The notes beneath the pieces are model-generated. The model was not told the DNA's origin, did not search any database, and worked only from the letters and a program-made list of their open reading frames with translations. This document shows, piece after piece, positions 4,891 to 56,317 of a stretch of DNA of 64,000 bases (position 1 is its first letter; the number at the start of each line of letters is the position of its first letter). Source of the stretch: Octopus sinensis (taxonomy: Eukaryota); contig NW_021832590.1 of assembly GCF_006345805.1 (NCBI RefSeq), forward strand, positions 124,001 through 188,000. The letters are read 5' to 3'. Made by a program: the position numbers and the translations under genes.

Positions 4891-7800
4891 TTATATGTTC
4901 AACATTTTTCCTCCCGAACCTGAAAATTTCCCGGAATGAGATCTATAGCTTACCTAGTATTAAGTGATTTCAAAACAAAATACATCATTAGAAAAAGTAT
5001 ATCCTCGGAATTTCCGTTTGCTTTCATATTTTTTTGATTTTGATTTTTTCAAAATAATATTGTTTTTTTTAGAAAGTCCTCTAAATAATAAAAACTTATT
5101 AAACTTACTTTGCAATCACCGGTGGCCACAGAGTAATGTTTAATATTAGAAAAAGCATGAACCAATAGGTTGGTTTTGTCCAAACAGAGTAGAGAGTCCC
5201 AACCGAGTCCGAATCAATATAGAAATAACTGTAAATGAAGGTCACTAGTAAGTAAAGGAATAGAGAGATCGTGACAGCAAATAAATGAACTGCAGTCCAT
5301 GACAAAAACGAAACTAGACACTTAAATGTAAGTTTGATAGCAGGGTACTCGACTGTTTACGACTACTATAATAATTGTCATTATTATTTGGCGGATCTGT
5401 TCAATGTCATCATTGGGAATTCCTCCTGTTGAGACGGTGTTGTTAAATGTTAAGAGCGTCAAAAATAAGATTGTTATTGCAGTCAGAATCCCTTCGGCTG
5501 CTGAAATTAGAAAGGTTTTGTTATTATAAATTTTGTTCTTTTGTCCAACATAGTAAAAGCCGAAATAATCTAGATCAGCTTTAAAGTCCTATTAATTAAA
5601 AAAGAACAAATTCACTTTGTCAAGAAATGCCATTACAGTAACAGGAGCGGATGTATAAATAAGGTTGTACAATGCAATGAATATTTGATTGTAAATGTTC
5701 TGCAATTTTTAATTTACAAATACCTGTGAACTGTATCCAGAGATAAATGTATAAAATCCTTGCATTAAAGCGAAGCAATAACTTTTGTAAATAAAATAAT
5801 TAGCAAAGTTTCCCAATCTTATATAAGAAAGTCTTCCGTGTAAAAAGATAAGTCTTCCTAGGTAGAAATATTCAGCAATCGAGTAATCCGAGTTCAGGAC
5901 TGCCTGCTGACCTTCAAATCCGTAAATTCCAACTCCAACGTTCGCGGCTAAAGTCTAAGGAAGAAGCAACCTTTGATCATGCTTACGTCATTAGCACCAT
6001 CTCCGACAGCCAAAGTCACGGCCTTTTTAGATGTCCGGATTAGTTCTACGACCGAGGACTTTTGTCCCGGTGTGAGTCTACAACAAATGACACTGCTGCA
6101 TAAATCCGTTAGCTCAATCAGTTTGTGTTTCATATCCTTCATTATAATTGCCTAAACTAAATCTTTAAAAAGACCAAGGTCTGTCCTGAAATGACAAGAC
6201 AGAATCCAATATGATCAAATTCTTTTTCATACTTATCTTTATCCTTCAAAAAACGCTCTGCTGTAATGTTTTGAGAACTCAGTTCGTCGAGGATCGATTT
6301 TTTAAAGTCGTCAAATATTTTGGCTACATTTTCTTCATCTTCTGTGACTTGCATAACGGTATCTGTCTCTTTAATTAGCCCGCAAAGATATCCGACATTA
6401 ATGGCGGTTTCTGTTAAATTAGAATTCTATTCAGCACCAATTTTGTCCCCTGTGAGCATCCACAATTTAATATTGGCATTAAAAAATTTATTAATTGTTT
6501 CAGGGACGTTTTTTTGAAGTTGATCTTCAATTCCAGATGCTCCCAACAAAGTAAGATTTTTTTCAATTTTTTCATAAGCCTGAACTAGACCGTCTCGATC
6601 GTTTATTTTATTTAAAGTTGAATTGTATTCGTTTTCCCAAATGCTCCATTCATTTTTTGAAATTATTTTATAACCAAAGCATAATGTTCGGAGTCCTTTC
6701 TCGGCGTAATTCTAAACTTCTCCTAAATTCTCAAACATTTATTTGTTGTTCGAGTAACTTGTAGTAATCAACGTCGCTTTTGTCACTAATTCCGAACAGA
6801 CTGGAATCCGCCCCCTTGCACAGTAAAATATACTGGGAATCTTGTTTGACGATAATTGACATTCGTTTCCTGACGCTGTCAAACTCCAAGATGGCCAAAA
6901 TTTCGTATTCAATCAGCCTTTTGTCAGCCTTGAGAATGATTTTTTTGGAATTTCTAAATGTAATTGTGTAATTGTATTCAAAGGCTCCTTCCACGAGGGC
7001 CTTTTCGTCAGGACTTTGTGCCTGAAATTTTATTTTCCCTAAATCTAAAAGGTTAATTTTGAAAAAACCTGCCTCTGTTTTAATAAAGACGGTATTGCAT
7101 ATTGCAAGCATTCTGAAGAAAAAATCAGTCTTTGAGTCTTCGACGTTCAAAGCAGCTTTCAGCTTTTTATTATTCTTCAAAATAATTATCAACTGACAAA
7201 CCGAAAAATCGTAACTTTTCTCAAGAATAGAAATCATTTTTAGTTTCATGATATTCTGAGCGTCAGAAAGTATTTTACCTTGGTTAAAGTGCCTGTTTTG
7301 TCAGTGAAAATGTGAGTGATTTGCCCTAGTTCCTCAATCAGTTCCGTCGAACGTGACCTGGCAGATTTGGAGTTATTGCCGACCATTTCCACATCCCAGT
7401 TTATATACATAGAATTGATAAAATGAATTAGATCAATGCTGATAAAGAGGGAAATGGGGATGATTGCGTTTATGATTATCAAGATAGGGAAAAAGTTTAA
7501 AAGAGTATCCACAAAAATTTCCAAGCCAAGGCTTTGGTTAAAATATCTTTTCACAGGTGAATAAATACGGAAGTTAATCCCATAAAACCTCTCCCAGATT
7601 GCATAAGAAACAAGCAATATAAATATGAAGATTCCGGCTATCAAAAATGTCTGAGAATTTGGTTTTACTTAAAAACCTTGATAAGATGTGAATTGAGGAT
7701 TTTGATAAGGTTTGTTTGTTTTTGCGTCAGTTTTCCGTTATTTCTGCTCAGTTTGGTGTCGTATCCAGCGTAGATCACTAGTCCAATAATATATTCCGTG

Positions 7801-8673
7801 TTTCTCAAAACAAATCCACGGAGAACAAGATTTTGTTTAAAAAGAGAAATTTGTTGGTCATCGAAAAATGCTGTTCCTGTAAAGTTTTCCAGGTCAGCGT
7901 TTGGCAGGTCACAAACCACTTTGCATTTGAAATTATTCATGCTTTCTAATTCCCTGATCTTGTCAACTATTTGTTCAGCGGCATAAAATGCCTTATAGTT
8001 AGTCTCCCTGATTTTTAATTTCAAAACCTAAACCCGTCTAGTTCGCTCGATTCGATGAAGCAAAATCCATCATCAGTGGTTGATAAAAGTAAAAGGTCAG
8101 CCTATATTTCAAATGACAAAGATTACTGGAACGGATTCGTTTTCCTTCACCATCACAATATCCCCGACTCTCAAGTTTTGCCATTTCTCAACTTTTTGTA
8201 TGTTATCTCTGATTACTTTGCATTTCCTCAAGTTAATTTCTTTGTCATTTTTATGCCGCAACTAGTCAAATTAAATTCTTAAAAATACATAGTCGTCATA
8301 GATCTCCCTTATTGCAGGAATGAGTAAAACAACGACGAGAGGAATAAGAGTGGTTAGTGGTGATAAGGAAGAGATTACCGGAATCGACTAATTAAATGGA
8401 ATTAATAATTATTTTAGAAAATAAAAACCTGGATAATGGCTAAAATAAGAAAATAAAGATTTGACGGGAGTTTTAGTTGTTTGTATAAAAACAATGGTAA
8501 AAATGAATACCAAGTGTAGAGAGAGGTTTTTATAAAGTTATTCTGTGAATGAGAATTTTTATAGTTTTATACACAAAATGAAGCTGTTTTCAAATTGCAA
8601 TTAACGCTGACAGTTCGTGATTTTTCTTTAAATTAAAAATGATATTTGAACCTTTTGATGATTTGAATTTCAT
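4891..8673 (-). CDS. P4-ATPase phospholipid flippase, ATP8-like class; multi-exon, C-terminal end approximate
   Basis: DGETN, DKTGTLT, QAQSPDEKALV, EFDSVRKRMS, CRLTPGQK, GDGANDV and RGYTFS motifs, joined by mini-introns. Confidence 0.92.
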
Positions 8674-9030: not shown

Positions 9031-11244
9031 TCAATACGCGGTGATGTTCGTGAGAATCTTCAACTTTTTAACTAGGTCTGAAATTGTAGGCCACGATTTA
9101 TTGTGCCCCTAAGTTTATAAGAAAAAGCATTAAAACTTGAAAAGAAAAATATCCATCTGGGTTTCGAACAATCAGGTAGTGAGCAATCTGCTCAGAAGTC
9201 CTCACGGATAGCGCAAAAGCTCCATCAATAGAAGATGATTTCCGAATCAGAAAATCTCCCACGTTCTTTTTTATCAAGTACTTGATTGCATCCGTTCTAA
9301 AATTTTTGAAAACAAAACACCTTGATATATTGGGTTGAAACCAGTCTTTCTCCAATTTATAGACTCTCGCGTACCAATCGTTTGCTGAATCTTGAATTTG
9401 AGTGTTTTTAGTCGAAGAATCATCATTCAAAGTTAAGAAATATGACCCATGTCCACTGTCGTTGTTGGAATGTTTTTTGGCATTAAAGAATTTCAATAAT
9501 TTTAATTTTTCCATTTTTTCATAATCCTTTTTCGAAATCTAAACCATAATCGATAACAAAGTGTCCCTCAATTCCATTGATTGATGGGGGGAAATATATA
9601 AAAGAATCCGTCGAACAGAACAAATTGTTTGAACGACTAAAGGTCTTTGACTTTCCGAGTGATTCATTTTCGATATTTTCTTTTTCAGTGTCATTTTTTC
9701 TCGGCCTGAGAACATGTGTTGGAGAAAAGTTAGGTTGTTGATAATAATCCAGATCTTTACGGTGTTTTCTTATTACTTTTCCTTCGTAATTAGAAACTTT
9801 TATTTTTGGTTTCTTTTCGGTTTCAAAAGAAGAAAGTCTATTTTCACAAATCTTGGGATTTTCTAGCTTCTCTTTGTAGGCAGGAAGCAAGCTGTATCTA
9901 AAAGGATTATTGTAGTCTTAAAACTTGATAGAAGAATTGCTCTGTTGAAACGAACCTTTCAGCATGTCGGCCATCTAAATTATAATAATCACGCTCGTTA
10001 ATTATAATAATCTAAAATGGCGCCGCGAATTTTAAAACAATGTTAAATATAATGATTTTTAGAAAGTACCCTGAACTCTCTAAATAAGCTATTTTCAACT
10101 AATAATTCCAATTATCCTAAAGCCCGAAGGGCATAAATTAGTCTTTTATGCAAATTTATAACTTGAAGAATTAGCGGTCGATAGCATGAATTAATTTAAA
10201 TTACATTTTCATTTTGGCGTCTTTTCCCCAAGAAATGATGCTTTTTAAAGAATAACTTTTTTTTAGTTTGAAATTACAAACCATCCAGGGATCAATTAGT
10301 TTATTCCTTTTGTGATTGTGGTTTGCCGAATATTTCATTTTAACAGCTTCACCAAAAGATTTTTTGATTTTTTCATTAATTGTTTCAATCTAGCATGTCA
10401 TCAAATAACCGCACTCAACTTCATATTTAAACGAAGTTGAGAAATAGTAAAAATAATGACTTGACTTTGGAATTTGGCTTGAAGACCGAGCTATGATCCC
10501 GAATCTTTTTCTTGAAGGATCACAAATTGCGTGAGAGATCCTTTTCATCGGGTAAGACATATCAAGATCCTAAAATATTTAGATAACTAGTTTTTAGACA
10601 AGCAGAAGCAGCACGCAGCATTATTAGTGATCGATACAGTGTCTGTTAAGCTGTTAATCAATTTATTAGCACTTAGATAGATGTTATTTGTGTATTACTT
10701 TAGAGTTTAGACTGCAAACTCTGATTTGAGTACTCGAAATTGTGATCATTACGGTTTCTGTAGAGATGTTGTTCATCTATAAAAAGAAATTAATAGTTTA
10801 AATAAATAAAAATATGTTGAAATAAAAATGAAGTAGGTTCAGAATCGACATGTGGGTAACTTAACATTTCAATTATGAATGTTAACATAATTATTGGATT
10901 AGTTAATTGATCGGTTAACAGATTCTGTAATTAACCTCCATGGTCTGCAGATAATGGACTGCTTTAGTGAGTTTGGTTGTCAAACATTCACTTTCCAGTA
11001 AAATTGATCCTTCATACTAAATTTAAGTAAAAAATAATTATGTTTATTTAACAATGAAAATGTTATTACAAATAATGTTAACGGTTTTTAGTCTTTAAGT
11101 AAATATAGAATTTTATATTTTTAATAAAATATATTATTGGGAACATATGTTTATTAAGCCAACCTTGACAATCAAAAAATCAGTGTTTAAAGAAATCTGG
11201 GGAGTTTGAAATATGTCTTCATTTGTGGTCACTGTAATTGACAT
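9031..11244 (-). CDS. SH2D5: PTB + SH2 adaptor, SH2D5-like; the PTB exons (10200-11244) are absent from the ORF track
   Basis: Spliced IVK|YEGSILL...VMITISSTQIRV...|DLDMSYPMKRISHAICDPSRKRFGIIAR (PTB), followed by WFQPNISR|TDAIKYL...GDFLIRKSSS...FALSVR...HYLI (SH2). The junction between the two halves (about 9975-10200) is uncertain. Confidence 0.7.
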
Positions 11245-12529: not shown

Positions 12530-13250
12530 TAGCCCAACCTCTTATAATGCGCCTGCAACCGCGATTGATGACGACTACATTTACAAGAAGATGAATAGTA
12601 AATTTGTGGATGACAATGTTCGCGGTGCTGTCAGGCTTGTTGTTTACACAAGTTTTCTTTAGTCCTCGAAACCCGTTGTTTTAAATTCTTTCAGAGAAAA
12701 ACACCCCTCTCAGCCCAACGACTTCAGACCCCATCGGTCCCCTGTCATGCTTGCTGTCAATCCATTTGTGGTCTCGGAAGCTCTCGTATTGTAATCCCTA
12801 CGGAACTTTTCCCCAGGAAGCAGCGGTGGAGTAGATGGGTTGAGGCCTAATAATTCAACAAATGTGACATCTCTGATCACCGCTGAAGCTTGATAGAAAT
12901 TATTATGTGACATGGGTTGCTGGATACGGATGGGCAACCGGTTACATTTTACCTTAAAAAATCCTAATTTACTCTCGAACAAATGATACTATTTTAATCA
13001 TTGGTTAACTTAAAAAATACTTTAGAGATAATTAATAGTTAGTCAGTTTCCGTTTTTGTAATTTGTAGGTTGGGCTAAAGGGAGGCTCTGAATTAGCAAG
13101 ATAGACCTGTAGCCAGCGAAAAAAAATAGTTCTATTTGTACAAAACAGTTCTTGTTCGACGATCGTAGTTAGCGAGTGAGAGGAGGTTTTATTACAGACT
13201 CTGGATGAGAGAAAACCGAGGCAGAAAGAAGCAGAGTAGAACAACTTAAG
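12530..13250. mobile_element. Two degenerate CRE-like N-terminal fragments (+ about 12530-13000; - about 13020-13250)
   Basis: NFSPGSSGGVDGLRP on plus. WLQVYLANSEPPF on minus, which is shared with 44810-45130. Confidence 0.65.
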
Positions 13251-36508: not shown

Positions 36509-39500
36509 CAGTGTTCCCTCTAAGCGAGTGGTAGCTATGCGCGCTGGGCACATTGCATTGTGCAGCGTCATAAAGTGACGTGTGCAAAAAATTTTGGGGG
36601 GGGGGAAAATTTTACAATTAAAAAACCAATGGTTAAAAAAATAGGTCTAGTAAATTGGATATTCTCTTCTGTTTTTATTTTGTATCCAAAATTTGTATAC
36701 TCGATCAAGATCCACTGTATTCCCACTTGTTAAATAGAACTTGATTCGCATGATCATCTCCAAATGGTCAATCTCAAGTCTATTACGTAGTTTAGTTTTG
36801 ATACAGTTCATCAAACTAAATCCACGTTCAGCATCAGCACTCGACGCTTGAAATGTGCCACAAATATCCACAAATGTTGCAGTGGCTGAAAATTTTTTCT
36901 CCGCTAGTATATAGTAAATTACATCTTCAAATGTTTTCAAAGCACCAGAGTGCAGTTTTTCTTTTAAAATAAACTTGAGATCTGTATATTCCGACTGCAG
37001 TTTTATGAGTGGGACTTCTGAAGAGAGTAAATTTTCATATTTTTTCGCTAATTTAATTATCTCCTCTTTTCCAAATTCAAAGTTTGTCTGATTTTGAATT
37101 GCTTGAGTGTCAAATGCTACCCATTCTCTTAATTCGTCAGCTGGAAATCTTTCTTGTAAATGCAGATAAACATGCTGATAAAGCATAGGATTTCATCTGT
37201 ATTTGTATCTCCATAACCAGTTGTTGATAACAACATCTTCACACTGTCACTCCAGTAAATTTCATTTCCATCCAAATATTGAGATTTCAGCTTCGAAATT
37301 TTTGCTCTGGCAAACTGTACAGCTTCTATGGTCGATATACAGCTTCTTTGGAAAACTGTGCACAAATCTGCTAATTCAGCCAAAATTTCATTTAAGACAG
37401 TTAAAGCAACATGAATAAGAGGATTTTGAAGTTGTTTTAAGCAATATTTGCAATCGGATCATTATCATCTTCAACCTGTTTCTTGAAATATTCAATTAAA
37501 ATTGTGTAGTTTTTTATCAAAGCTTTAACAGCAAAATGCCGAGACATCCATCTCACTTCATTTAGTGGCTTAAATGAAACGACATCTTCAACAACAACAT
37601 TAGCCAGGTCCTGAAATGCAGCTTTTTTTTATACTTGATCGACTGAAAACAGTATAAACAGTCCGGAGTAATATTTCAATATTTTTCACAAGATTATTTT
37701 TTTTCCATGCATCATCGATCCCTAGATCTTGTCTGTGAACGACGCAATGTTGTTCAGTAAGATGAGGAACCTCAGCACGGATCAGTGATGCCACGCCATT
37801 TCTTCTCCCTAGCATAACGGATGCCCCATCTGATGTAAACATTACCATCTTTTGAAAATCAAGATTGTTTGTCATGTAGAATTTCTTGATTGCAATGAAA
37901 ATAGATTTACTGTCACAACTTGTAAGTTTCATTATGCTAGCAAAAACTGTTTTGTGATAATTTGTCCCCGTAGGACGATATTTAATATATATACAGTCCG
38001 ACCCCAAAATGGGGCAGACCCCAGGGGTGGGGCACCCTCGGATTTTGGGGCACCCCCGCAATTTGGGGCACTTTATTCCAAAAGTACATTTTGGCAGAAA
38101 AAAAATAAAAATCGATAAAAAATTATGGAATTTTTGGGGCACCATAAAATCATTTATAAGGAATTAAAATATAAAATAAAATTATAATAAATTAATTATT
38201 TTTGTTTTATTTTCAATTTATATTTTTATTGTTGTGGTTATGGATTACGAAACTAAATTGAAGATTGCTAAAGAAATTTTGAAGAAAAATTTATCTGAGA
38301 GGCAACTAATGAAAAAGTACAACACAAGTAAAGGAACAATATCAAGAATAAAACGAAATATTGTACCTTTCTTGCAACACGGCAATACTATTTCTGAGGA
38401 ATATGACACATTTAAAGCCGATAAAGATAAATTTGATGATCAAGTCTTTGAAATATTTCAAAGACTACGCGTAGATAAAATTCCGATTTCAGGCCCTATT
38501 TTGAAAAAAATTGCCTTAGTTACAGCTTCAAAAATTGGATTTACTTCTTTTAAGCTTCCAATGGGTGGCTTGATAGATTTAAATTGCGGCATGAACTTCA
38601 ATTCAAGTCAATATGTGGTGAAAAAGCTTCATGTGATTTATCTTATGTGAAAAATTATTTTGAAAAATATGACCAGAAAGTATTAAAATATGGACCTGAG
38701 AATATATTTAATTGTGATGAAACTGCGCTTTTTATAAAAAGAACTCCTCAAAAATCATTTGTTGAACAAGGCGAACCGTGTTTGGTTATAAACAAGGGAA
38801 AAAGACTCACTGTTCTTCTATGCTGCAGTTTAATCGGGGAAAAACTTATCCATTGATTATTGGAAAATATAAAAAACCTCGGTGTCTAAAAAATTTTGAT
38901 GTTCAAGATTTTGGGTTATTGTATTCATCTTCTCAAAATGCATGGATGACTGGAAAGACTTTTATGAGTTGGCTTACACTTATAAATGAATCGTTTTGCA
39001 AAAACAACAGAAAAATATTATTAATACTTGACAATGCGGGATGCCATAAAACTGCCGAATGTTCGAACATCGAATTTTTATTTTTGCCGAAAAATACAAC
39101 GCCCTATTTACAACCTTTGGATATGGGAATAATCAAGATTTTTAAAGATTATTATTCCTCTTTCTTAATGGAATTTTTATGTTTTCAAGATTTCGAAAAC
39201 GATTTTACACATTCTATTGGTAAATTAAATTTGCGTCAGGTTATGATGCTAATTTCAAAAGGATGGGAGAAAATAGATGCTAAAAGTATTGTTAATTGTT
39301 GGAAGAAAATCGACAGGAACCGTGATTCTATGCAACAAAAAACTGTCTAACAGATGAACATTTAGATCAAGTTGTTAACGAAACAATTGATGGAGAATGC
39401 GAAGACATGAACAATAATGTTTATGATACATATTCAGAAACCGAAAATAGTGAAAATGTCGTAGCAAAAACAAAAGATCTGCTTAACAATTTAGAAGAAA

Positions 39501-40548
39501 AAATTTCTAATGTTGCACCAAGTATGCTCCGAGATTTTTTTGATTTTCGGCTGAAATTGACGAACAATATCAGACAAAACTCTACAAATAAAAAGAAAAT
39601 AACTGAATATTTTAGTAAAAATGTTTTTTGATGTTTATTAATGGTTTAATTTTTAAAAAAATAACAAACCCCTGTTTTTGGGGCACCCCCGCATTTTGGG
39701 GCACTTGGTGCCCCATTTGGGGGTCGGACTGTAATAAGCATTTTGGTTACGGATATATCTGTGCTTTCGTCCACAATGAGTGTATGGAACCGAGACTCTC
39801 TAATTTCCTGCATACATATCTCTTTGACCACGTAGTCGATGCATTCAACAAACTCAAATGCATAATTTTTACTTCGCCAGCTATCAGGAAGTTCTACATA
39901 TTTTGCCATATGATCATGTATTTCATAACAGAAAGTAATGAAGCATTCATGGAGAGAGCCAAAATAACATTGTCAATGAGAATTTTCACTTTTTCAATTT
40001 TACTTCGTGCACGATCACTCATTTTGAATCTCATCTGTCGGTCATCCTTAGACTCTGTGAGCAAGCAGCTGATTCCAGTTCCTGCTCGAATTCTTCTTAA
40101 TTTTATTATTGAATCTGATGAATTTTATGGGTAATATGTCTCTTCAGATAATCCAATTTCCATATATCCCAGGTTTTTCCACTCGCAAAATCACAAGTCG
40201 CTTTAGCGTCGCCACATATTTTACAAACAACTCCGCAGTCTTCGGAAAAACTAAAAATATCACCCAGTTGCACATGTTGGGGATTTTTGAATCTGGTGTT
40301 AAGGTTTCGACGTACTCTATCAACCATTCCGGCTTAAAAGAAGGAGAATTTTCTTAAGTCTCATATCAATATTATAGACACGTTTTCGTTTTGAAATGAA
40401 AATAAGAATATATAAATTCATATAAAAAATTAAAAAAAATAGCAATTTTTAATATTATACTTTCTACTGCGCAGAAAAAAATTTTGCTGCGCAGCAAGGT
40501 GCAAACTGCTGCGCGGCCGCGCACGCGCGCAGCTTAGAGGGAACACTG
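36509..40548 (-). mobile_element. Full-length hAT transposon (ZNF862-like transposase) with TIRs and an 8-bp TSD
   Basis: TIR CAGTGTTCCCTCTAAGC at both ends; TSD CTTGAGGT at 36501-36508 and 40549-40556. Motifs VCKIC...KRH, DESTD, SDGASVM, HCVVHR, VRWMSR, SSADAERGFS. Several 1-nt frameshifts. Confidence 0.95.
37994..39731 (+). mobile_element. Full-length pogo/Tigger transposon nested in the hAT transposase
   Basis: TIR CAGTCCGACCCC...TGGGGCA with TA duplicated at 37992-37993 and 39732-39733. CENP-B HTH (PISGPIL...FKASNGWL), NCDET, LILDNAGCH, QPLDMGII. Confidence 0.95.
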
Positions 40549-40982
40549 CTTGAGGTACCCCTCTTTTGAGATCGATTCCGACAAACTGTTTCCGCATCGT
40601 AGGTATGACCTCCTCATTGATAAATAGCTCTTCAGCCAATTGACCGTTCTAGACCCGGGTTTGATTTTGGCGACACTTTCCAAGAGGCCCAGGTGCCATA
40701 CGCTGTCAAAAGCTTTTGAGACATCGAGGCAGATAGCAATAGTCGCTATATTGTTTGCAAGACTAAGCGAGATAATTTTCTCGAGTTCTCCGAAACAATC
40801 TCCGCAGGATCTTTTTCGTCGGAATCCCCACTGCTCCGCTGCAAGTGCACCTGATTCCTGTACAAAGTTCGAAAGCCTTATGAAGACAATCCGTTCCATA
40901 ATTTTAGAGACGGAGCATATTAGGCTTATTGTCTGATAGTTCTCTGCATGGTCCTTCATTTTTCCAGACTTGGGAAATATTA

Positions 40983-42758
40983 TGTCACAGTCCGAATAAA
41001 ATACACGCCGAATAATTACATTCTTTAATTTTACTGAAATTAAAAATTTACACAACAAAATGTTTAATTATTATTAAAAATATGATTTTTAATGTAAAAT
41101 TCATTAATTTTTCTACTAATTTGTATAAAAAAACCAACCACACTCATTTTACGCAGTTGTTTGAATATTGTTATTCCATTTTAGGTTATCCTAATAAAAT
41201 TTTCAGATAAAATTTATCGTTAATTTAAATAAAAAATTATTTTTATTATGGATTTATGAAAATTAATCAATTTTAGCTAATCGAGAAATATGAATTCCGT
41301 GTAACCGCTCACCGTCCTCCTTTTCGATAACATAGAGATCATTTCTTCGCTCGACAAAATATACTTATTAACTCAAGTCCATCGTACAGCGGATACTGCC
41401 GAACATTGGCATCGTTGTCCTGTCTAAAAATTAATTTGACGCTTGAGACCTTAAAAGCACAGTCGTTCCGACATTGATATTTTCTTCGTCGTATCTCCAT
41501 TTTCTTTTTTCAATCATTTTTTCGCCAGCAATAATTAAGTTTTCTAATGCACTTTCTCGTGCCTCTGATAATCCAGTTGAATCATAGGCTAAAAGTTGCT
41601 CCATTCCCCCTTCATCAATCCTTCCAGGATTTTCAACACCCATGAATATATAAAAAGGGATTTTTTTTGTCGAAGAATGAATGCTGTTATTGTAATCATA
41701 CACGATGTCCTTTATGCATTCGCGATATCGTCCAAAACAATTTTGAGAAGAACTTGCCGACGATATCCAGCGTTTTATGCTTTGATTAAATCTACAAATC
41801 GATTTTAAATCATTAACCTTTCGACTTGCCCTTGTACCCAAGGAGCACGAGGCCTCCCACGTACATGTTTTATACCATATTTCGTACATAGAGCATCCAT
41901 TTGCGAATTGCAAAATTCCCTTCCATTATCAGTGTGTAGAATAAGCGGAGGCCCGACATAATAAAAATTCTTTGGAATAAATCTGCGATTTCTTCAGAAG
42001 ATTTGGTCACCGACAGTTCAAGCATTACATATTTGGAAAAAGAATCCACAATTACCAAAATCTATTTATTAACATTAAATTCATACCCAGCTAAAGCCAT
42101 CATTCAACGCCGAATATCTTCTGAGGTCAATTAAATCCGCAATGTATCTGTCCCTACATCTCCTTGCAATGATTGGCGTAATCGGAGGCTTCGTAGACAA
42201 TAATTTTTTCGACTAAGATATATTACTAAAAAGAGTTATTACCTGACAGAAAGCACAATTCGGAATCACCTTAGAGATTTCTTCTCTATTCAATCCATAA
42301 TAGAGATTTCTTAATTTCGAAAAAAGCCGGTCTCTCCCAAAGTGGTTATAGTTATGTTCCGCCTAAATTTTATTTATTAAGTTGGACCTCAACGCACTTA
42401 AGCTTTAATTCGATTTCATCTTCACAGAAAAAACGCAATTTAAGCCCATTTTTTCGAAAATATGTTTTCCATTTTCAAAATGGAAATTCTTTCCAATTTT
42501 GTGAGCCTGTATCGCTCATGCCGCTCGATTGACAATGTATCAAAGTTGGAGTCTTTCATTTCTTTGATTTTGTCCAGTGTTTCCTTAAATAATCTCACTA
42601 CACGCATGTTTCACGCTTTTTTAAATAAAAAATAATAATGTGATTCTACTAAAATAATAATCAATTATTGATTTTTTTCATACTAATTTTTAGATTTCTA
42701 ATTTTTTCAGCCATTTGTGACAAGTGTAGATTATTCGGCGTGTATTTTATTCGAACTG
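40983..42758 (-). mobile_element. Ginger-like DNA transposon (gypsy-type integrase) with about 33-bp TIRs
   Basis: Inverted repeats CAGTCCGAATAAAATACACGCCGAATAATTACA (40988-41020) and 42725-42758 differ by 1 mismatch + 1 indel. The left end begins TGT. Confidence 0.85.
41263..42607 (-). pseudogene. Ginger-like H2C2-DDE integrase with five mini-introns and about four 1-nt frameshifts
   Basis: Spliced: VE|AEHNYNHFGRD...CAFCQ|SKK...RDRYIADLIDL...GFSW|ILVIVDSFSKY...ILHTDNGREF...QGQVER|FNQSIKR...YNNSIHSST...VLLR|QDND. Confidence 0.88.
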
Positions 42759-42907
42759 TTATTTTCGTCTTTTTAATTCTAATTCTGTAATAGAAGACCA
42801 GATTTAACTAATAAAATTCAACAGCTTCATTATTGTTAATTAACGAGAGAGACATGGTTAGTAGTGTTAGTATTTTAGTAGTGTTAGTATTTCAGTATTT
42901 GAGACAT

Positions 42908-43225
42908 TTAAGGAGAGAATCTGTCTTGATTCTCTTCTGATGGAGGAGTATCCATAAAAGGAGTAATATTTGGAAATGTTTTCATGTCCTTCAACCAATC
43001 AAGTGGCTTTAGAGAGTCGTCTGATTCATTCATATTTTGTGTTTGAAACGGAGAGTTGCTGTCATCAAAATCTAAGGGAGTAATATTTGGAAATGTTTCC
43101 ATGTCCTTCAACCAATCAAGTGGCTTTAGAGAGTCGTCTGATTCATTCATATTTTGTGTTTGAAATGGAGAGTTATTGTCATCGGAAAATTGATTTTCTG
43201 AATTTTGTGATTCTTTTAGTCCCAT
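42908..43225 (-). repeat. 105-aa ORF built on a 117-bp tandem duplication
   Basis: The 39-aa unit NSPFQTQNMNESDDSLKPLDWLKDM(E/K)TFPNITP occurs twice; the offset 42964 to 43081 is 117 bp. Confidence 0.8.
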
Positions 43226-44809: not shown

Positions 44810-45130
44810 AAACGTTTTTTAAAGACGGCTGAGAGGGATGTTTTTCTCTGAGAGAATTCAGAACGGCGGGTGTTGATGACAAAAGGGAACTCTACGAGGC
44901 AACAAGCCTGACAGCATCGCGAACATCGCCGTCCATGATTTTGCAATTTACTTTTCTGTAAAGGTAGTCGTCATCGTACGGGGGTGCAGTAAAATTTGGG
45001 CAGGTTGAGTCGAAAGGAGGCTCTGAGTTGGCGAGATAGGCCTGGAGCCAGCAAAGAGAAAAACAGTTCCCGTCGTACGAGGACAGTTCATGTTTGACGG
45101 TCGAAGCAAGCGAGGGGGAGGTTTTGTTAC
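44810..45130 (-). mobile_element. CRE-like N-terminal fragment
   Basis: WLQAYLANSEPPF...DGDVRDAVRLVAS. Confidence 0.7.
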
Positions 45131-47418: not shown

Positions 47419-48953
47419 ATGGAAAGACACGAAAAAGACAGAAATTCTACCAACGAAAAAATAATGGAATCAAAAATCGAGGAAATGGAAAAAGGTAGTC
47501 GTTTCTAATTATAATTTTAGGTGAGAGATTTCTCCGGAGAATGAGAAAAAGTAATAAACATAGCGGAACAAACCAATTGGGAGGAAATTTTGTAAACGGG
47601 AGACCCTTGCCAAACCAGACTCGTCAGGAAATAATAAAGCTGGCTTATAGTGGAGCGAGGGCATGCGACATTTCAAGGATTCTCCAAGTCTCAAACGGGT
47701 GTGTGTCCAAGATTTTATGTCGCTACAACGAAACTGGATGTTTCGAACCAAGGACGATTGGTGGGAGCAAGCCACGTGTTGCTACAAATCATGTAATTCA
47801 GTACATTGCCCAATACAAGCGAGAATGCCCCTCAATATTTGCTTGGGAAATCCGAGACCGATTGTTGAATAACGCGGTCTGTACACAAGAAAACGTCCCC
47901 AGTGTTGTAAACTAAATAATTACCAGTAGATATCTTCGATAAACAGAGTTTTGAGAAACCTACAAACAGGGAACATCAAAGACATGAATTCTCATTCCAC
48001 ATATACAACTGACTATCAGCCCAGACATGAGATCGGTTACGGAACGAATTGGGCATTTTCTCAGCAAATGTTTACTCAGAACTTGTCTAATTCCTCGGCT
48101 GAGCAATCCACCATGGTAGCACAGACATGTATGACTATTTTATAGTGCAACGCCCTTCAAGATACTCCAGTGAAAAAGAAGAGTCAAAGAAATAGAACTT
48201 CCTTTTCCGCAGAACAATTAAAGACGATGGATGAACGTAAAACGTGGAATTTTAATTTTAGACTTCCAACAGTCTCACTACCCGGATATCTCGATCAGAG
48301 AAAAAATCTCAGAGAAGCTCAATATTCCCGAGGCCCGGATTCAGGTTAAAGAACACTTTTAACAAAAAGGTTTGGTTTTCCAATCGACGGGCAAAGTGGA
48401 GACGTGAGGAAAAACTAAATGAAGACAGAGGAAACGAATCTACCCAAAGAAACTACAAAGTCGAAATTAATGAAAAAATACCGTCTGAAATGTCTCAGCC
48501 ATTCCAAACTAATTTCGGGTCATTTTCTCAGTAACACTTATTGAATAATGTAGAAATATGTACCAGCCATACAACTATATTCCGGACTTGTCAATGCAGA
48601 GTAGAGATGGTCTAGTCCCTGATTATTTCAACCAATTCGTTACAGGTACTTCACTTGTCACTCACTTTTAGTTCCACCTCTTAATACTCGTTATAATTTT
48701 AATTACTGGACAAAAAACGAGACCGAGTCACATGAAGCTTTAAAAAATTACAACTTACAAGATGTCTCCTCAATCGGTAAATACATGCCAAGCGACAACG
48801 AATTTTCTTTGGCAAATACAATGAATGCTTCTTGTTTGTGAGAATGTCTCATGTTTAGCAATGCCCACAATTGAGATCCCTTCAAATCAAGTCATTCGTC
48901 CAGAGTACTACCACGGATTTGACACACGGCCCTTCTGGACCAAATTTAATTAG
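47419..48953 (+). CDS. Pax6: Pax6; 8 introns (26, 26, 30, 25, 25, 23, 26, 25 nt)
   Basis: Paired domain [18 protein letters not shown]...NVPS|[10 protein letters not shown]; homeodomain QRNRTSF...IQ|[15 protein letters not shown] (S50); C-terminus RPFWTKFN*. Confidence 0.95.
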
Positions 48954-50396: not shown

Positions 50397-51878
<1,482 letters not shown>

Positions 51879-55471: not shown

Positions 55472-56317
55472 ATGGTCGATAAGCTCAACTGGTCGTCCTT
55501 AGAATTCGCGATATATTTAAGCGATCAGATATTCCGTTTCAACGGTGGATCACTAAACATTAACCTCTCTAGACACATGCATTCTGTTTGAAGCATTCTC
55601 TAAGAATAACTCAAAAGATATCCCTGAATACATTCGAAACTGTTTTTCCTCCTGTTGCAAGAATAAAATGTCTGAATATCGCAATGCAGTGCGAGCTTTG
55701 GACGTGTTAATTGTCAGAGAGGAAAATTCACACAGCAATTCTGTCAGCATAATTAATGAAATTCGCCAAAAAGTATGTTATGTTGCTAGGAAACTAACAG
55801 TGCGTTGAGAAAATAAAACAGGCCAAGGAATTCGTCTGCCGATATGCCGATCTGTTTGCCAGTATGCCAGCAGCCTCAGTGGAGACTCGTCTGTTCTCTA
55901 AAAAGATGTCATTTCATTCCGTAATTCGTAGGGTCGCGGACTACAGTCGGTACATGGCTGAGGTCTCCTCTCCCAATGACGAATTTGTGGCCGAGAGTTT
56001 GGAGGCATATTCCGCAGCGAGTGACCTGGCTGAGGATTTGCCCGCAGACCATGTTGGAAAGCTGGGACTTGCGCTTAACCGTTCTGTGTTTTTCTACGAA
56101 ATTATGAACGACAAGAAGCAGGCCATTCAAATAGCCAATGAGGCGTTTGCTGGGGCATATGCCAAATACGACGAGGATGGTCACACAATGAGTGACGAGT
56201 CCGCTAACATTACTCAACTCATCAAGGACAATCTCGTCCTCTGGAGTTTGTCTTTTCCTTATTATAGACGCTGGGGACGACGACAGTCAAGACAAGTCCT
56301 CCAATGACGAGTTATGA
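55472..56317 (+). CDS. 14-3-3: Highly divergent 14-3-3 protein
   Basis: KKM|VADYSRYMAE...LGLALNRSVFFYEI...QLIKDNLVLW; the N-terminus aligns loosely (RNCFSSCCKN). Confidence 0.9.

What the first reader, a model, noticed from the sequence alone, without database searches (positions are those of the whole stretch)
40983..42758. TIR-bounded Ginger-like integrase transposon carrying five host-style mini-introns
Seen: a gypsy-type integrase (H-x3-H...C-x2-C; DLID, TDNG, VER catalytic motifs) whose frame is restored by removing five GT-AG segments of 25 (42363-42387), 30 (42213-42242), 25 (42062-42086), 26 (41792-41817) and 26 nt (41424-41449). The first four splices rejoin recognisable integrase motifs (e.g. 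QGQVER|FNQ, GFSW|ILVIVD); the fifth junction is less certain. The gene lies between about 33-bp inverted repeats. Established: Ginger DNA transposons can hold introns, while LTR retroelements lose them. Inference: this mobile element has either gained introns at host density (5 in 1.35 kb) or shrunk them to the host 22-32 nt size. It could be splice-regulated (germline versus soma) and a vehicle for intron spread.
Basis: partly seen in the sequence, partly recalled or inferred. Interest (0 to 1): 0.82.

Follow-up and report, generated by a model that had tools for sequence, protein, structure and literature searches.

The report
Broken Ginger2-type transposon with five mini-introns
This is one decayed copy of an integrase-encoding cut-and-paste transposon whose gene carries five 25-30-base introns like those of its animal host's own genes; it is an unusual gene structure for this transposon family, but not a new kind of element.

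Summary
On the minus strand, 40983-42759 is a 1.78-kb element bounded by 30-nt inverted repeats (29/30 matching). It encodes a standalone Gypsy-type integrase (Pfam Integrase_H2C2 + rve; D, D, 35 residues, E).

Removing each gives a gap-free alignment to intronless relatives, including the "uncertain" fifth. Each carries an in-frame stop if retained.

Sixteen host introns that I mapped in the same window (RuvBL1, a P4-ATPase) are 22-41 nt, median 25.5. "Host-style" is therefore right. The host looks like a dicyemid.

The frame is not fully restored. Four extra 1-nt frameshifts remain, all at short homopolymers. One terminus lacks the family's terminal TGTC. No target-site duplication is visible, and there is no second copy in the window. 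This copy is therefore a relic unless the indels are assembly errors.

Similarity and architecture point to Ginger2/KRBA2-type elements. No tree against reference sequences was built.

Every relative I sampled (Logan, TARA, Octopus, a 25%-GC eukaryote) is intronless at these sites, so intron gain in this lineage is the simplest reading. That sample is biased towards intronless genes.

Splice regulation and "vehicle for intron spread" have no support. Interest is moderate to low.

The parts
40983..42759 (-). Whole element, 1,777 bp, with the gene on the minus strand.
   Evidence: Bounded by the inverted repeats. No second copy in the window.
40983..41016 (+). Left terminal inverted repeat (3' end in gene orientation). 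It starts TGTCACAGTCC, which fits the Ginger/Gypsy TGTNR terminus.
   Evidence: It matches 10 of 11 bases of TGTCACCGTCC, found at both termini of relative L001. It holds two CCGAATAA 8-mers.
42730..42759 (-). Right terminal inverted repeat (5' end in gene orientation). It lacks the outer 4 nt: AATA stands where TGTC is expected.
42388..42607 (-). Exon 1, from the ATG at 42607. It has two 1-nt deletions, at about 42494 (GG run) and about 42450 (A6 run).
   Evidence: After allowing for these shifts the N-terminus aligns to P0001 from residue 1.
42363..42387 (-). Intron 1: 25 nt, GT-AG, phase 0, GC 0.20, with an in-frame stop if retained.
   Evidence: The junction KLKCVE|AEHNYNH is gap-free against relatives.
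42243..42362 (-). Exon 2, encoding the H2C2 zinc finger (HNYNH...CAFC).
42213..42242 (-). Intron 2: 30 nt, GT-AG, phase 0, GC 0.20. Retention would end in an in-frame TAG.
   Evidence: Junction CAFCQ|SKKLLSTKP.
42087..42211 (-). Exon 3 (runs to 42212), containing the first catalytic D (ADLIDL).
42062..42086 (-). Intron 3: 25 nt, GT-AG, phase 0, GC 0.16.
   Evidence: Junction GFSW|ILVIVDS.
41818..42061 (-). Exon 4, containing the second D (HTDNG) and the E (QVER). It has a 1-nt deletion at about 41951 (GGGCC).
41792..41817 (-). Intron 4: 26 nt, GT-AG, phase 2, GC 0.23.
   Evidence: Junction QGQVER|FNQSIKRW.
41450..41791 (-). Exon 5.
41424..41449 (-). Intron 5: 26 nt, GT-AG, phase 2, GC 0.31.
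   Evidence: The junction VLLR|QDNDAN aligns to VFLR NDTDAN of P0001.
41263..41423 (-). Exon 6, running to the TAA stop at 41265-41263. It has one extra T at about 41356 (T4 run).
40534..40982 (-). Flank, not part of the element: a 5'-truncated non-LTR reverse transcriptase that abuts the left terminus.
   Evidence: Pfam RVT_1 matches from profile position 5. The missing upstream half of the LINE is not on the other side of the element.

Best explanation
The region is one copy of a small Ginger2/KRBA2-type cut-and-paste DNA transposon. It lies in the genome of an animal with ultra-short introns, most probably a dicyemid such as Dicyema japonicum.

Its only gene encodes a roughly 404-aa integrase-like transposase: an H2C2 zinc finger, a DD35E RNase-H-like core and a C-terminal region. 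In an intact copy this enzyme would bind the TGTCA-ended inverted repeats and cut and rejoin the element (inferred from the family).

The gene is split by five genuine host-type spliceosomal introns of 25-30 nt. Each contains an in-frame stop, so the transposase can only be made from fully spliced mRNA (inferred from sequence; no RNA data).

This particular copy is a relic. Four 1-nt frameshifts break the reading frame, one terminus has lost its last 4 bases, and no target-site duplication survives.

Every relative sampled is intronless at these positions. The introns were therefore most likely acquired after the family settled in this ultra-short-intron lineage. The alternative, that they were inherited long and then shrunk, cannot be excluded. 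Retained introns also show that the element copies itself as DNA, not through RNA.
For: - TIRs: 30 nt, 29/30, none expected by chance.
- Integrase domains are above Pfam cut-offs, and there is no RT or RNase H inside the 1.78 kb.
- The D-D-35-E residues are invariant in alignment A1.
- End-to-end alignment to the uninterrupted 413-aa P0001, E 1e-128.
- All five junctions are gap-free against ten relatives.
- All five segments are GT-AG, have GC 0.16-0.31 against exon GC 0.35-0.42, and hold an in-frame stop if retained.
- 16 host introns mapped in the same window are 22-41 nt (median 25.5), all GT-AG.
- The close family is about 33 standalone integrases, some named KRBA2-like or SCAND3-like. 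There is then a large gap to Gypsy pol proteins and GIN1. KRBA2 and SCAND3 derive from Ginger2 (PMC3575427).
- The left terminus TGTCACAGTCC fits TGTNR (PMC2836005). It nearly equals both termini of relative L001.
- Relatives are single uninterrupted ORFs in Logan, TARA, Octopus sinensis and a 25%-GC eukaryotic contig.
- Host identity: only myxobolids and D. japonicum have introns under 30 bp among animals (PMC13644364). The window GC of about 0.36 matches the 36.7% and 49% repeats of D. japonicum (PMC6736024).
Against: - There is no RNA evidence that the five segments are spliced.
- No TSD is present, and one terminus is incomplete.
- Copy number is unknown: there is one copy in 64 kb, and the host genome is absent from the searchable collections.
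- The TIRs (30-34 nt) are shorter than the 45-297 nt listed for described Ginger2 families.
- No formal phylogeny against reference Ginger1/Ginger2 sequences was possible.
- The sample of relatives is biased towards intronless genes, because most come from ORF-calling on short contigs.
- The four frameshifts all sit in homopolymers, and the published assembly of the likely host merged PacBio RS II with Illumina data. Some or all could be assembly errors, in which case the copy is intact rather than a relic.
Confidence: 0.72

Rival explanations
1. It is a domesticated or long-resident host gene derived from a Ginger2 integrase (like KRBA2, SCAND3 or GIN1). It would have acquired host-density introns over a long vertical history. 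The inverted repeats would be leftovers and the frameshifts assembly errors.
For: - Five introns in 1.35 kb matches the density in the host genes mapped here, which usually takes long residence.
- Only one copy is present in the window.
- All four frameshifts sit in homopolymers, and the likely host's assembly includes PacBio RS II data.
- Ginger integrases are domesticated repeatedly (PMC2836005, PMC3575427, PMC12863088).
Against: - The TIRs are 97% identical and keep the family's terminal motif at one end, whereas domesticated genes normally lose them.
- The locus sits in a transposon graveyard of LINE, pogo and hAT fragments.
- Host genes in the same window needed no frameshift correction over the parts mapped, about 450 and about 900 codons. 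Every transposon copy examined did.
Confidence: 0.12
2. The copy is an intact, autonomous transposon. The four 1-nt frameshifts would be homopolymer errors of a long-read-derived assembly of a repeat, and the element may still be mobile.
For: - All four shifts lie in runs (GG, A6, GGGCC, T4).
- There are no nonsense substitutions in about 404 codons.
- The catalytic and zinc-binding residues are all intact.
- The assembly of the probable host merged Falcon/PacBio RS II and Illumina contigs.
Against: - One terminus lacks the terminal TGTC and there is no TSD, which argues for real damage.
- The neighbouring pogo and hAT copies show the same kind of decay.
- Genuine indels also favour homopolymers.
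Confidence: 0.2
3. The five segments are not introns. They would be small AT-rich insertions accumulated in a dead integrase pseudogene that happen to look like introns.
For: The copy is otherwise decayed (four frameshifts), and there is no RNA evidence.
Against: - All five begin GT and end AG, and all fall in a 25-30-nt band that matches the 16 host introns.
- All are clean insertions with no loss of flanking codons.
- The other indels in this copy are single bases.
- As a rough estimate, the chance of GT and AG at both ends of five independent insertions is below 1e-8 (inference).
Confidence: 0.04
4. It is a fragment of an LTR retrotransposon or a Polinton/Maverick (integrase only) rather than a Ginger element.
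For: The integrase is Gypsy-like (H2C2 + rve). An RT fragment lies immediately next to it.
Against: - The adjacent RT is outside the inverted repeat. It is a non-LTR-like RVT_1 fragment with no RNase H or LTR.
- The introns exclude an RNA-copied origin.
- The close family consists of standalone 200-494-aa integrases, while Gypsy pol proteins score far lower (E 1e-29 against 1e-100 to 1e-188).
- Polinton integrases lack the H2C2 finger (PMC2836005).
Confidence: 0.03

Closest known systems
Ginger2/Tdd DNA transposons (Bao, Kapitonov & Jurka 2010, PMC2836005), e.g. Ginger2-1_NV
   Same: - A single gene for a standalone Gypsy-like integrase with H2C2 and DDE, and no YPYY or GPY/F motif.
- Terminal inverted repeats, with a TGTNR terminus at the intact end.
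- Occurrence in protostomes and cnidarians.
   Different: - Smaller (1.78 kb against 2.75-6.7 kb) with shorter TIRs (30-34 nt against 45-297 nt).
- No 4-bp TSD or RTATAY target can be seen in this copy.
- Five mini-introns. The 2010 description mentions introns only for Ginger1 (1-4 per gene).
KRBA2 / SCAND3 (ZBED9) integrase domains and the 'KRBA2-like' proteins of Octopus sinensis and of the microsporidia Dictyocoela and Nosema
   Same: These are the closest named relatives by sequence (38-46% identity, E 1e-42 to 1e-68). They share the standalone integrase architecture.
   Different: - They are encoded by one uninterrupted exon or ORF.
- The mammalian genes are domesticated and have lost their TIRs.
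- The copy here keeps its TIRs and is broken.
Ginger1 elements and the GIN1/GIN2 genes
   Same: They are integrase-type DNA transposons in which canonical GT-AG introns interrupt the transposase gene (1-4 introns).
   Different: - Ginger1 has YPYY and GPY/F motifs, OTU or Ulp1 C-terminal domains and CCGG/CCGT TSDs. None of these is seen here.
- A GIN1-like protein scores only E 1e-17.
Intron-bearing transposase genes in general (Drosophila P element, CACTA elements; PMC4158355)
   Same: The transposase can only be made after host splicing, and the intron sizes follow host norms.
   Different: There is no evidence here for regulated or tissue-specific splicing. The introns are among the shortest known in animals.

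Membership tests
Ginger2/Tdd DNA transposons | A standalone Gypsy-like integrase (H2C2 zinc finger + DDE core) as the only protein, with no RT or RNase H. | tested here: met
   Pfam Integrase_H2C2, rve and rve_3 are above their cut-offs. The D, D, E residues are invariant with 35-residue spacing. There is no room or signal for another gene within 1.78 kb.
Ginger2/Tdd DNA transposons | Terminal inverted repeats (45-297 bp in the described families). | tested here: met
   30 nt, 29/30, extending to 34 nt at the left end. This is shorter than in the described families.
Ginger2/Tdd DNA transposons | Termini that follow 5'-TGTNR. | tested here: inconclusive
   The left end is TGTCA, almost identical to both termini of relative L001. 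The right end has AATA where TGTC is expected, which suggests truncation.
Ginger2/Tdd DNA transposons | A 4-bp TSD (5 bp in Tdd) at AT-rich RTATAY targets. | tested here: inconclusive
   No matching 4-5-bp flanks were found. One terminus is damaged and the other abuts a truncated LINE, so this copy cannot decide the point. The flank AATATTA is AT-rich.
Ginger2/Tdd DNA transposons | Absence of the YPYY and GPY/F motifs. | tested here: met
   Neither motif occurs in the 404-aa conceptual protein (sequence). The C-terminus reads YPLYDG instead.
Ginger2/Tdd DNA transposons | Phylogenetic grouping with Ginger2, KRBA2 and SCAND3 integrases. | tested here: inconclusive
   The evidence is indirect only. 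The nearest named proteins are KRBA2-like or SCAND3-like, while Gypsy pol and GIN1 score far lower. No reference Ginger sequences were available for a tree.
Ginger2/Tdd DNA transposons | Multiple dispersed copies, as evidence of mobility. | not testable with these tools
   There is one copy in the window. The host genome is not in the searchable collections.
Ginger1 DNA transposons | YPYY and GPY/F motifs, an OTU or Ulp1 C-terminal domain, and CCGG/CCGT TSDs. | tested here: not met
   None of these is present. A GIN1-like protein scores only E 1e-17.
Host-type spliceosomal mini-introns | GT-AG boundaries and a length within the host's own range. | tested here: met
   5 of 5 are GT-AG, at 25-30 nt. 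The 16 host introns in the window are 22-41 nt with median 25.5.
Host-type spliceosomal mini-introns | Removal restores an uninterrupted homologous coding sequence. | tested here: met
   All five junctions are gap-free against ten relatives, and the protein aligns end to end with P0001.
Host-type spliceosomal mini-introns | Spliced junctions observed in RNA. | not testable with these tools
   No transcript data were accessible.
LTR (Gypsy) retrotransposon | LTRs and a pol gene with RT and RNase H upstream of the integrase. RNA-mediated copying removes introns. | tested here: not met
   The element has inverted rather than direct terminal repeats. There is no RT or RNase H inside it. It retains five introns.

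The most novel reading that the evidence does not exclude
An ancestrally intronless Ginger2 transposase gene gained all five introns de novo while the family lived in the dicyemid lineage. Transposon families turn over faster than host genes. This would therefore be a datable record of recent, repeated intron gain in an animal whose introns are otherwise reported as positionally conservative. The family's copies could then be used to measure the rate and mechanism of mini-intron birth.
Probability: 0.35. Interest if true: 0.55.

Novelty: new member of a known kind. Interest (0 to 1): 0.3.

Why it matters
Introns inside DNA-transposon genes are known, and integrase-type (Ginger) transposons are known. 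The element is therefore not a new class.

What is worth keeping is the combination of three things:
- The family is intronless in every relative I could sample.
- This copy carries five introns, at the density of the host genes mapped in this window.
- It sits in one of only two animal lineages with introns below 30 nt.

If other copies confirm the structure, the family offers a bounded time window for asking how and how fast ultra-short introns arise. It would also show that gene-finders and repeat annotators that assume intronless transposases will miss such elements in these genomes.

Tried and rejected
- **Second copy or solo TIR in the window:** none found.
- **Exact-product look-up of the largest integrase ORF in public assemblies:** not on record. 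The host genome could therefore not be searched for copy number or TSDs.
- **TIRs and TSDs around relatives:** only L001 shows termini (TGTCACCGTCC at both ends), and it has no TSD. The Octopus, TARA and L006 loci gave no convincing TIRs. The P0003 contig had no DNA on file.
- **Metagenome scan with the family profile:** it returned only distant (at most 41% identity, mostly 25-33%) integrases, and I did not examine these loci further.
- **Introner-like origin:** none of the five intron sequences has a near-copy (6 or fewer mismatches beyond chance) elsewhere in the window.
- **A sixth intron in place of the frameshifts:** rejected, because the alignments are contiguous with exactly one base missing or extra at each site.
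- **Ciliate host with reassigned stop codons:** an early idea, rejected. The window holds Pax, RuvBL1 and other animal genes read in the standard code.
- **Myxozoan host:** considered less likely on GC content (Henneguya 29%) and on the 82% identity of RuvBL1 to bilaterians.
- **Mini-introns in neighbouring transposons:** the pogo copy has none, only 1-nt frameshifts. In the hAT remnant I saw only frameshifts and no evident mini-introns, but that copy is too decayed to be sure.
- **Mended sequence:** none was built. Frameshift sites are marked X in the conceptual protein.

Full report
**1. What is in the sequence**

The gene lies on the minus strand.
- A 30-nt inverted repeat, 29/30 complementary, bounds the region at 40987-41016 and 42730-42759. 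None is expected by chance, and the window holds no other copy.
- Between the repeats, three-frame translation shows integrase motifs scattered over the frames.
- The spliced product hits Pfam Integrase_H2C2, rve and rve_3 above their curated cut-offs.

**2. Are the five segments real interruptions?**

A search of 5.8 billion proteins found a small family of standalone integrases. The best hit, P0001, is 48% identical over the 352-aa query and is an uninterrupted ORF of 413 aa.
- In a ten-sequence alignment, each of the five excisions gives a gap-free join inside conserved blocks: KLKCVE|AEHNYNH, CAFCQ|SKKLLSTKP, GFSW|ILVIVDS, QGQVER|FNQSIKRW and VLLR|QDNDAN.
- The zinc-binding H, H, C, C and the catalytic D, D, E (35-residue spacing) are invariant columns.
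- The full conceptual protein of 404 aa aligns from residue 1 to the end of P0001, at 45% identity and E 1e-128.
- The segments have GC 0.16-0.31, against 0.35-0.42 in the exons. Their phases are 0, 0, 0, 2, 2. Each puts a stop codon in frame if retained.
- They are clean insertions bounded by GT and AG in five cases out of five. Chance or pseudogene debris cannot plausibly account for that (inference).

**3.

Removing the five segments does not restore the frame. Four single-base shifts remain:
- a missing base at about 42494 (GG);
- a missing base at about 42450 (A6);
- a missing base at about 41951 (GGGCC);
- an extra T at about 41356 (T4).

All four shifts are in homopolymers, so two readings are open: real decay, or assembly error in a repeat. 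Three observations bear on this.
- Host genes in the same window needed no frameshift correction in the parts I mapped, about 450 codons of RuvBL1 and about 900 of a P4-ATPase.
- The neighbouring pogo and hAT copies do carry such shifts.
- The likely host's published assembly merged PacBio RS II and Illumina contigs (PMC6736024).

I lean towards real decay. One terminus is also damaged, as the next section describes.

**4. Termini and flanks**

- The left end reads TGTCACAGTCC from 40983. This fits the TGTNR rule for Ginger and Gypsy termini (PMC2836005). It is almost identical to TGTCACCGTCC at both ends of the relative on Logan contig L001.
- The right end stops four bases short, with AATA in place of TGTC.
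- There is no 4- or 5-bp target-site duplication.
- The left flank is a 5'-truncated non-LTR reverse transcriptase that begins right at the junction (RVT_1 from profile position 5). The missing half of that LINE is not on the other side of the element.
- One deletion that removed both the terminal four bases and the upstream LINE half would explain both oddities. This is inference and was not tested.

**5. Host and host introns**

The window is animal DNA. It holds RuvBL1 (82% identical to hemichordate, mollusc and cnidarian orthologues), a Pax paired box, 14-3-3 and a P4-ATPase. It also holds many LINE, hAT and pogo fragments.
- Using orthologues as guides I mapped 4 introns in RuvBL1 (22-27 nt) and 12 in the P4-ATPase (23-41 nt). 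All are GT-AG, with median 25.5 nt and mean GC 0.31.
- Among animals, introns under 30 bp are reported only for myxobolid myxozoans and Dicyema japonicum (PMC13644364).
- The window's GC of about 0.36 and its repeat load match D. japonicum (36.7% GC, 49% repeats, LINE-rich) better than Henneguya (29% GC). The host is therefore probably a dicyemid, but this is not proven.
- The integrase introns (25-30 nt, one per about 270 nt) match the host in both size and density.

**6. Family assignment**

- A profile search shows about 33 close standalone integrases (E below 1e-48). Some are named KRBA2-like or SCAND3-like (Octopus sinensis, Dictyocoela, Nosema).
- There is then a wide gap to Gypsy pol polyproteins (E 1e-29 and weaker) and a GIN1-like protein (1e-17).
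- KRBA2 and SCAND3 integrase domains derive from Ginger2 (PMC3575427).
- The protein lacks the YPYY and GPY/F motifs of Ginger1.
- Together with the TIRs and the TGTCA terminus, this makes a Ginger2-type element the best assignment.
- Three caveats apply: the TIRs are shorter than in described families, the TSD cannot be judged in this copy, and no reference-based tree could be built.

**7. Origin of the introns**

Every relative whose DNA I could inspect is uninterrupted at these sites:
- P0001 (L001/L002);
- the Octopus sinensis gene, a single 1,194-nt exon (L003);
- a TARA contig (L004/L005);
- L006;
- a 25%-GC eukaryotic contig, which has one frameshift but no introns (L007).

The mammalian KRBA2 integrase is also encoded by one exon. 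Gain in this lineage is therefore the simplest reading. The sample is biased, however, because ORF-calling on short contigs favours intronless genes. The intron sequences have no near-copies in the window, so nothing suggests an introner-like mobile origin.

**8. Mechanism and claims not supported**

- Shown: a TIR-bounded integrase gene split by five host-type introns, in a copy that is broken.
- Inferred from the family: cut-and-paste transposition by the DDE integrase acting on the TGTCA termini. Transposase production would depend on complete splicing, since each retained intron terminates translation.
- Not supported: germline or soma splice regulation, and the element acting as a vehicle for intron spread.
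- Not testable here: copy number, and RNA junction reads.

**9. Verdict**

This is a new member of a known kind, a compact Ginger2/KRBA2-type element, with an unusual intron-rich gene structure in an ultra-short-intron animal. Interest is moderate to low unless genome-wide copies show that the introns were gained recently.

Noticed in passing
window 38043-39706: A pogo/Tigger-like DNA transposon (Pfam DDE_1) with 31-bp inverted repeats. Its reading frame is broken by 1-nt frameshifts and it has no mini-introns. It is nested inside a decayed hAT-like element (36647-38042 and 39707 to about 40400, minus strand).
   Followed up: partly
window 40534-40982 (minus): A 5'-truncated non-LTR reverse transcriptase whose truncation point coincides exactly with the left terminus of the integrase element. 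The missing upstream half is not on the other side of the element.
   Followed up: partly
window 42957-43190: A 117-bp tandem duplication (94% identity) inside the 3' end of a minus-strand ORF that stops near 42908, about 150 nt upstream of the element.
   Followed up: no
window 5403-8623 (minus) and 50412-51875 (plus): A P4-ATPase and RuvBL1 with 12 and 4 introns of 22-41 nt (median 25.5), all GT-AG. The window also holds a Pax paired-box ORF (47541-47915), 14-3-3 (55864-56307) and an SH2-domain ORF (9098-9514). Together these point to a dicyemid-like host.
   Followed up: yes
window 44823-45130 and 12535-13195: Two stretches about 75% identical at the DNA level, probably copies of another repeat family.
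   Followed up: no
L001 60-124 (Logan SRR26596599): The closest relative's left end carries its terminus twice in inverted orientation (TGTCACCGTCC...GGACGGTGACA), forming a 59-bp palindrome. This could be a foldback or MITE-like unit, or an assembly artefact.
   Followed up: no
window 40990-41016 and 42730-42756: Each inverted repeat contains two CCGAATAA 8-mers 17 nt apart. The TIRs of L001 likewise contain a doubled GC-rich 9-mer. These are possible transposase-binding sites.
   Followed up: no
L003 4001-5194 (Octopus sinensis VCDQ01000492.1): The nearest relative named for an animal comes from Octopus sinensis, and octopuses host dicyemids. At 39% identity and without introns it is too distant to indicate recent host-parasite transfer.
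   Followed up: partly
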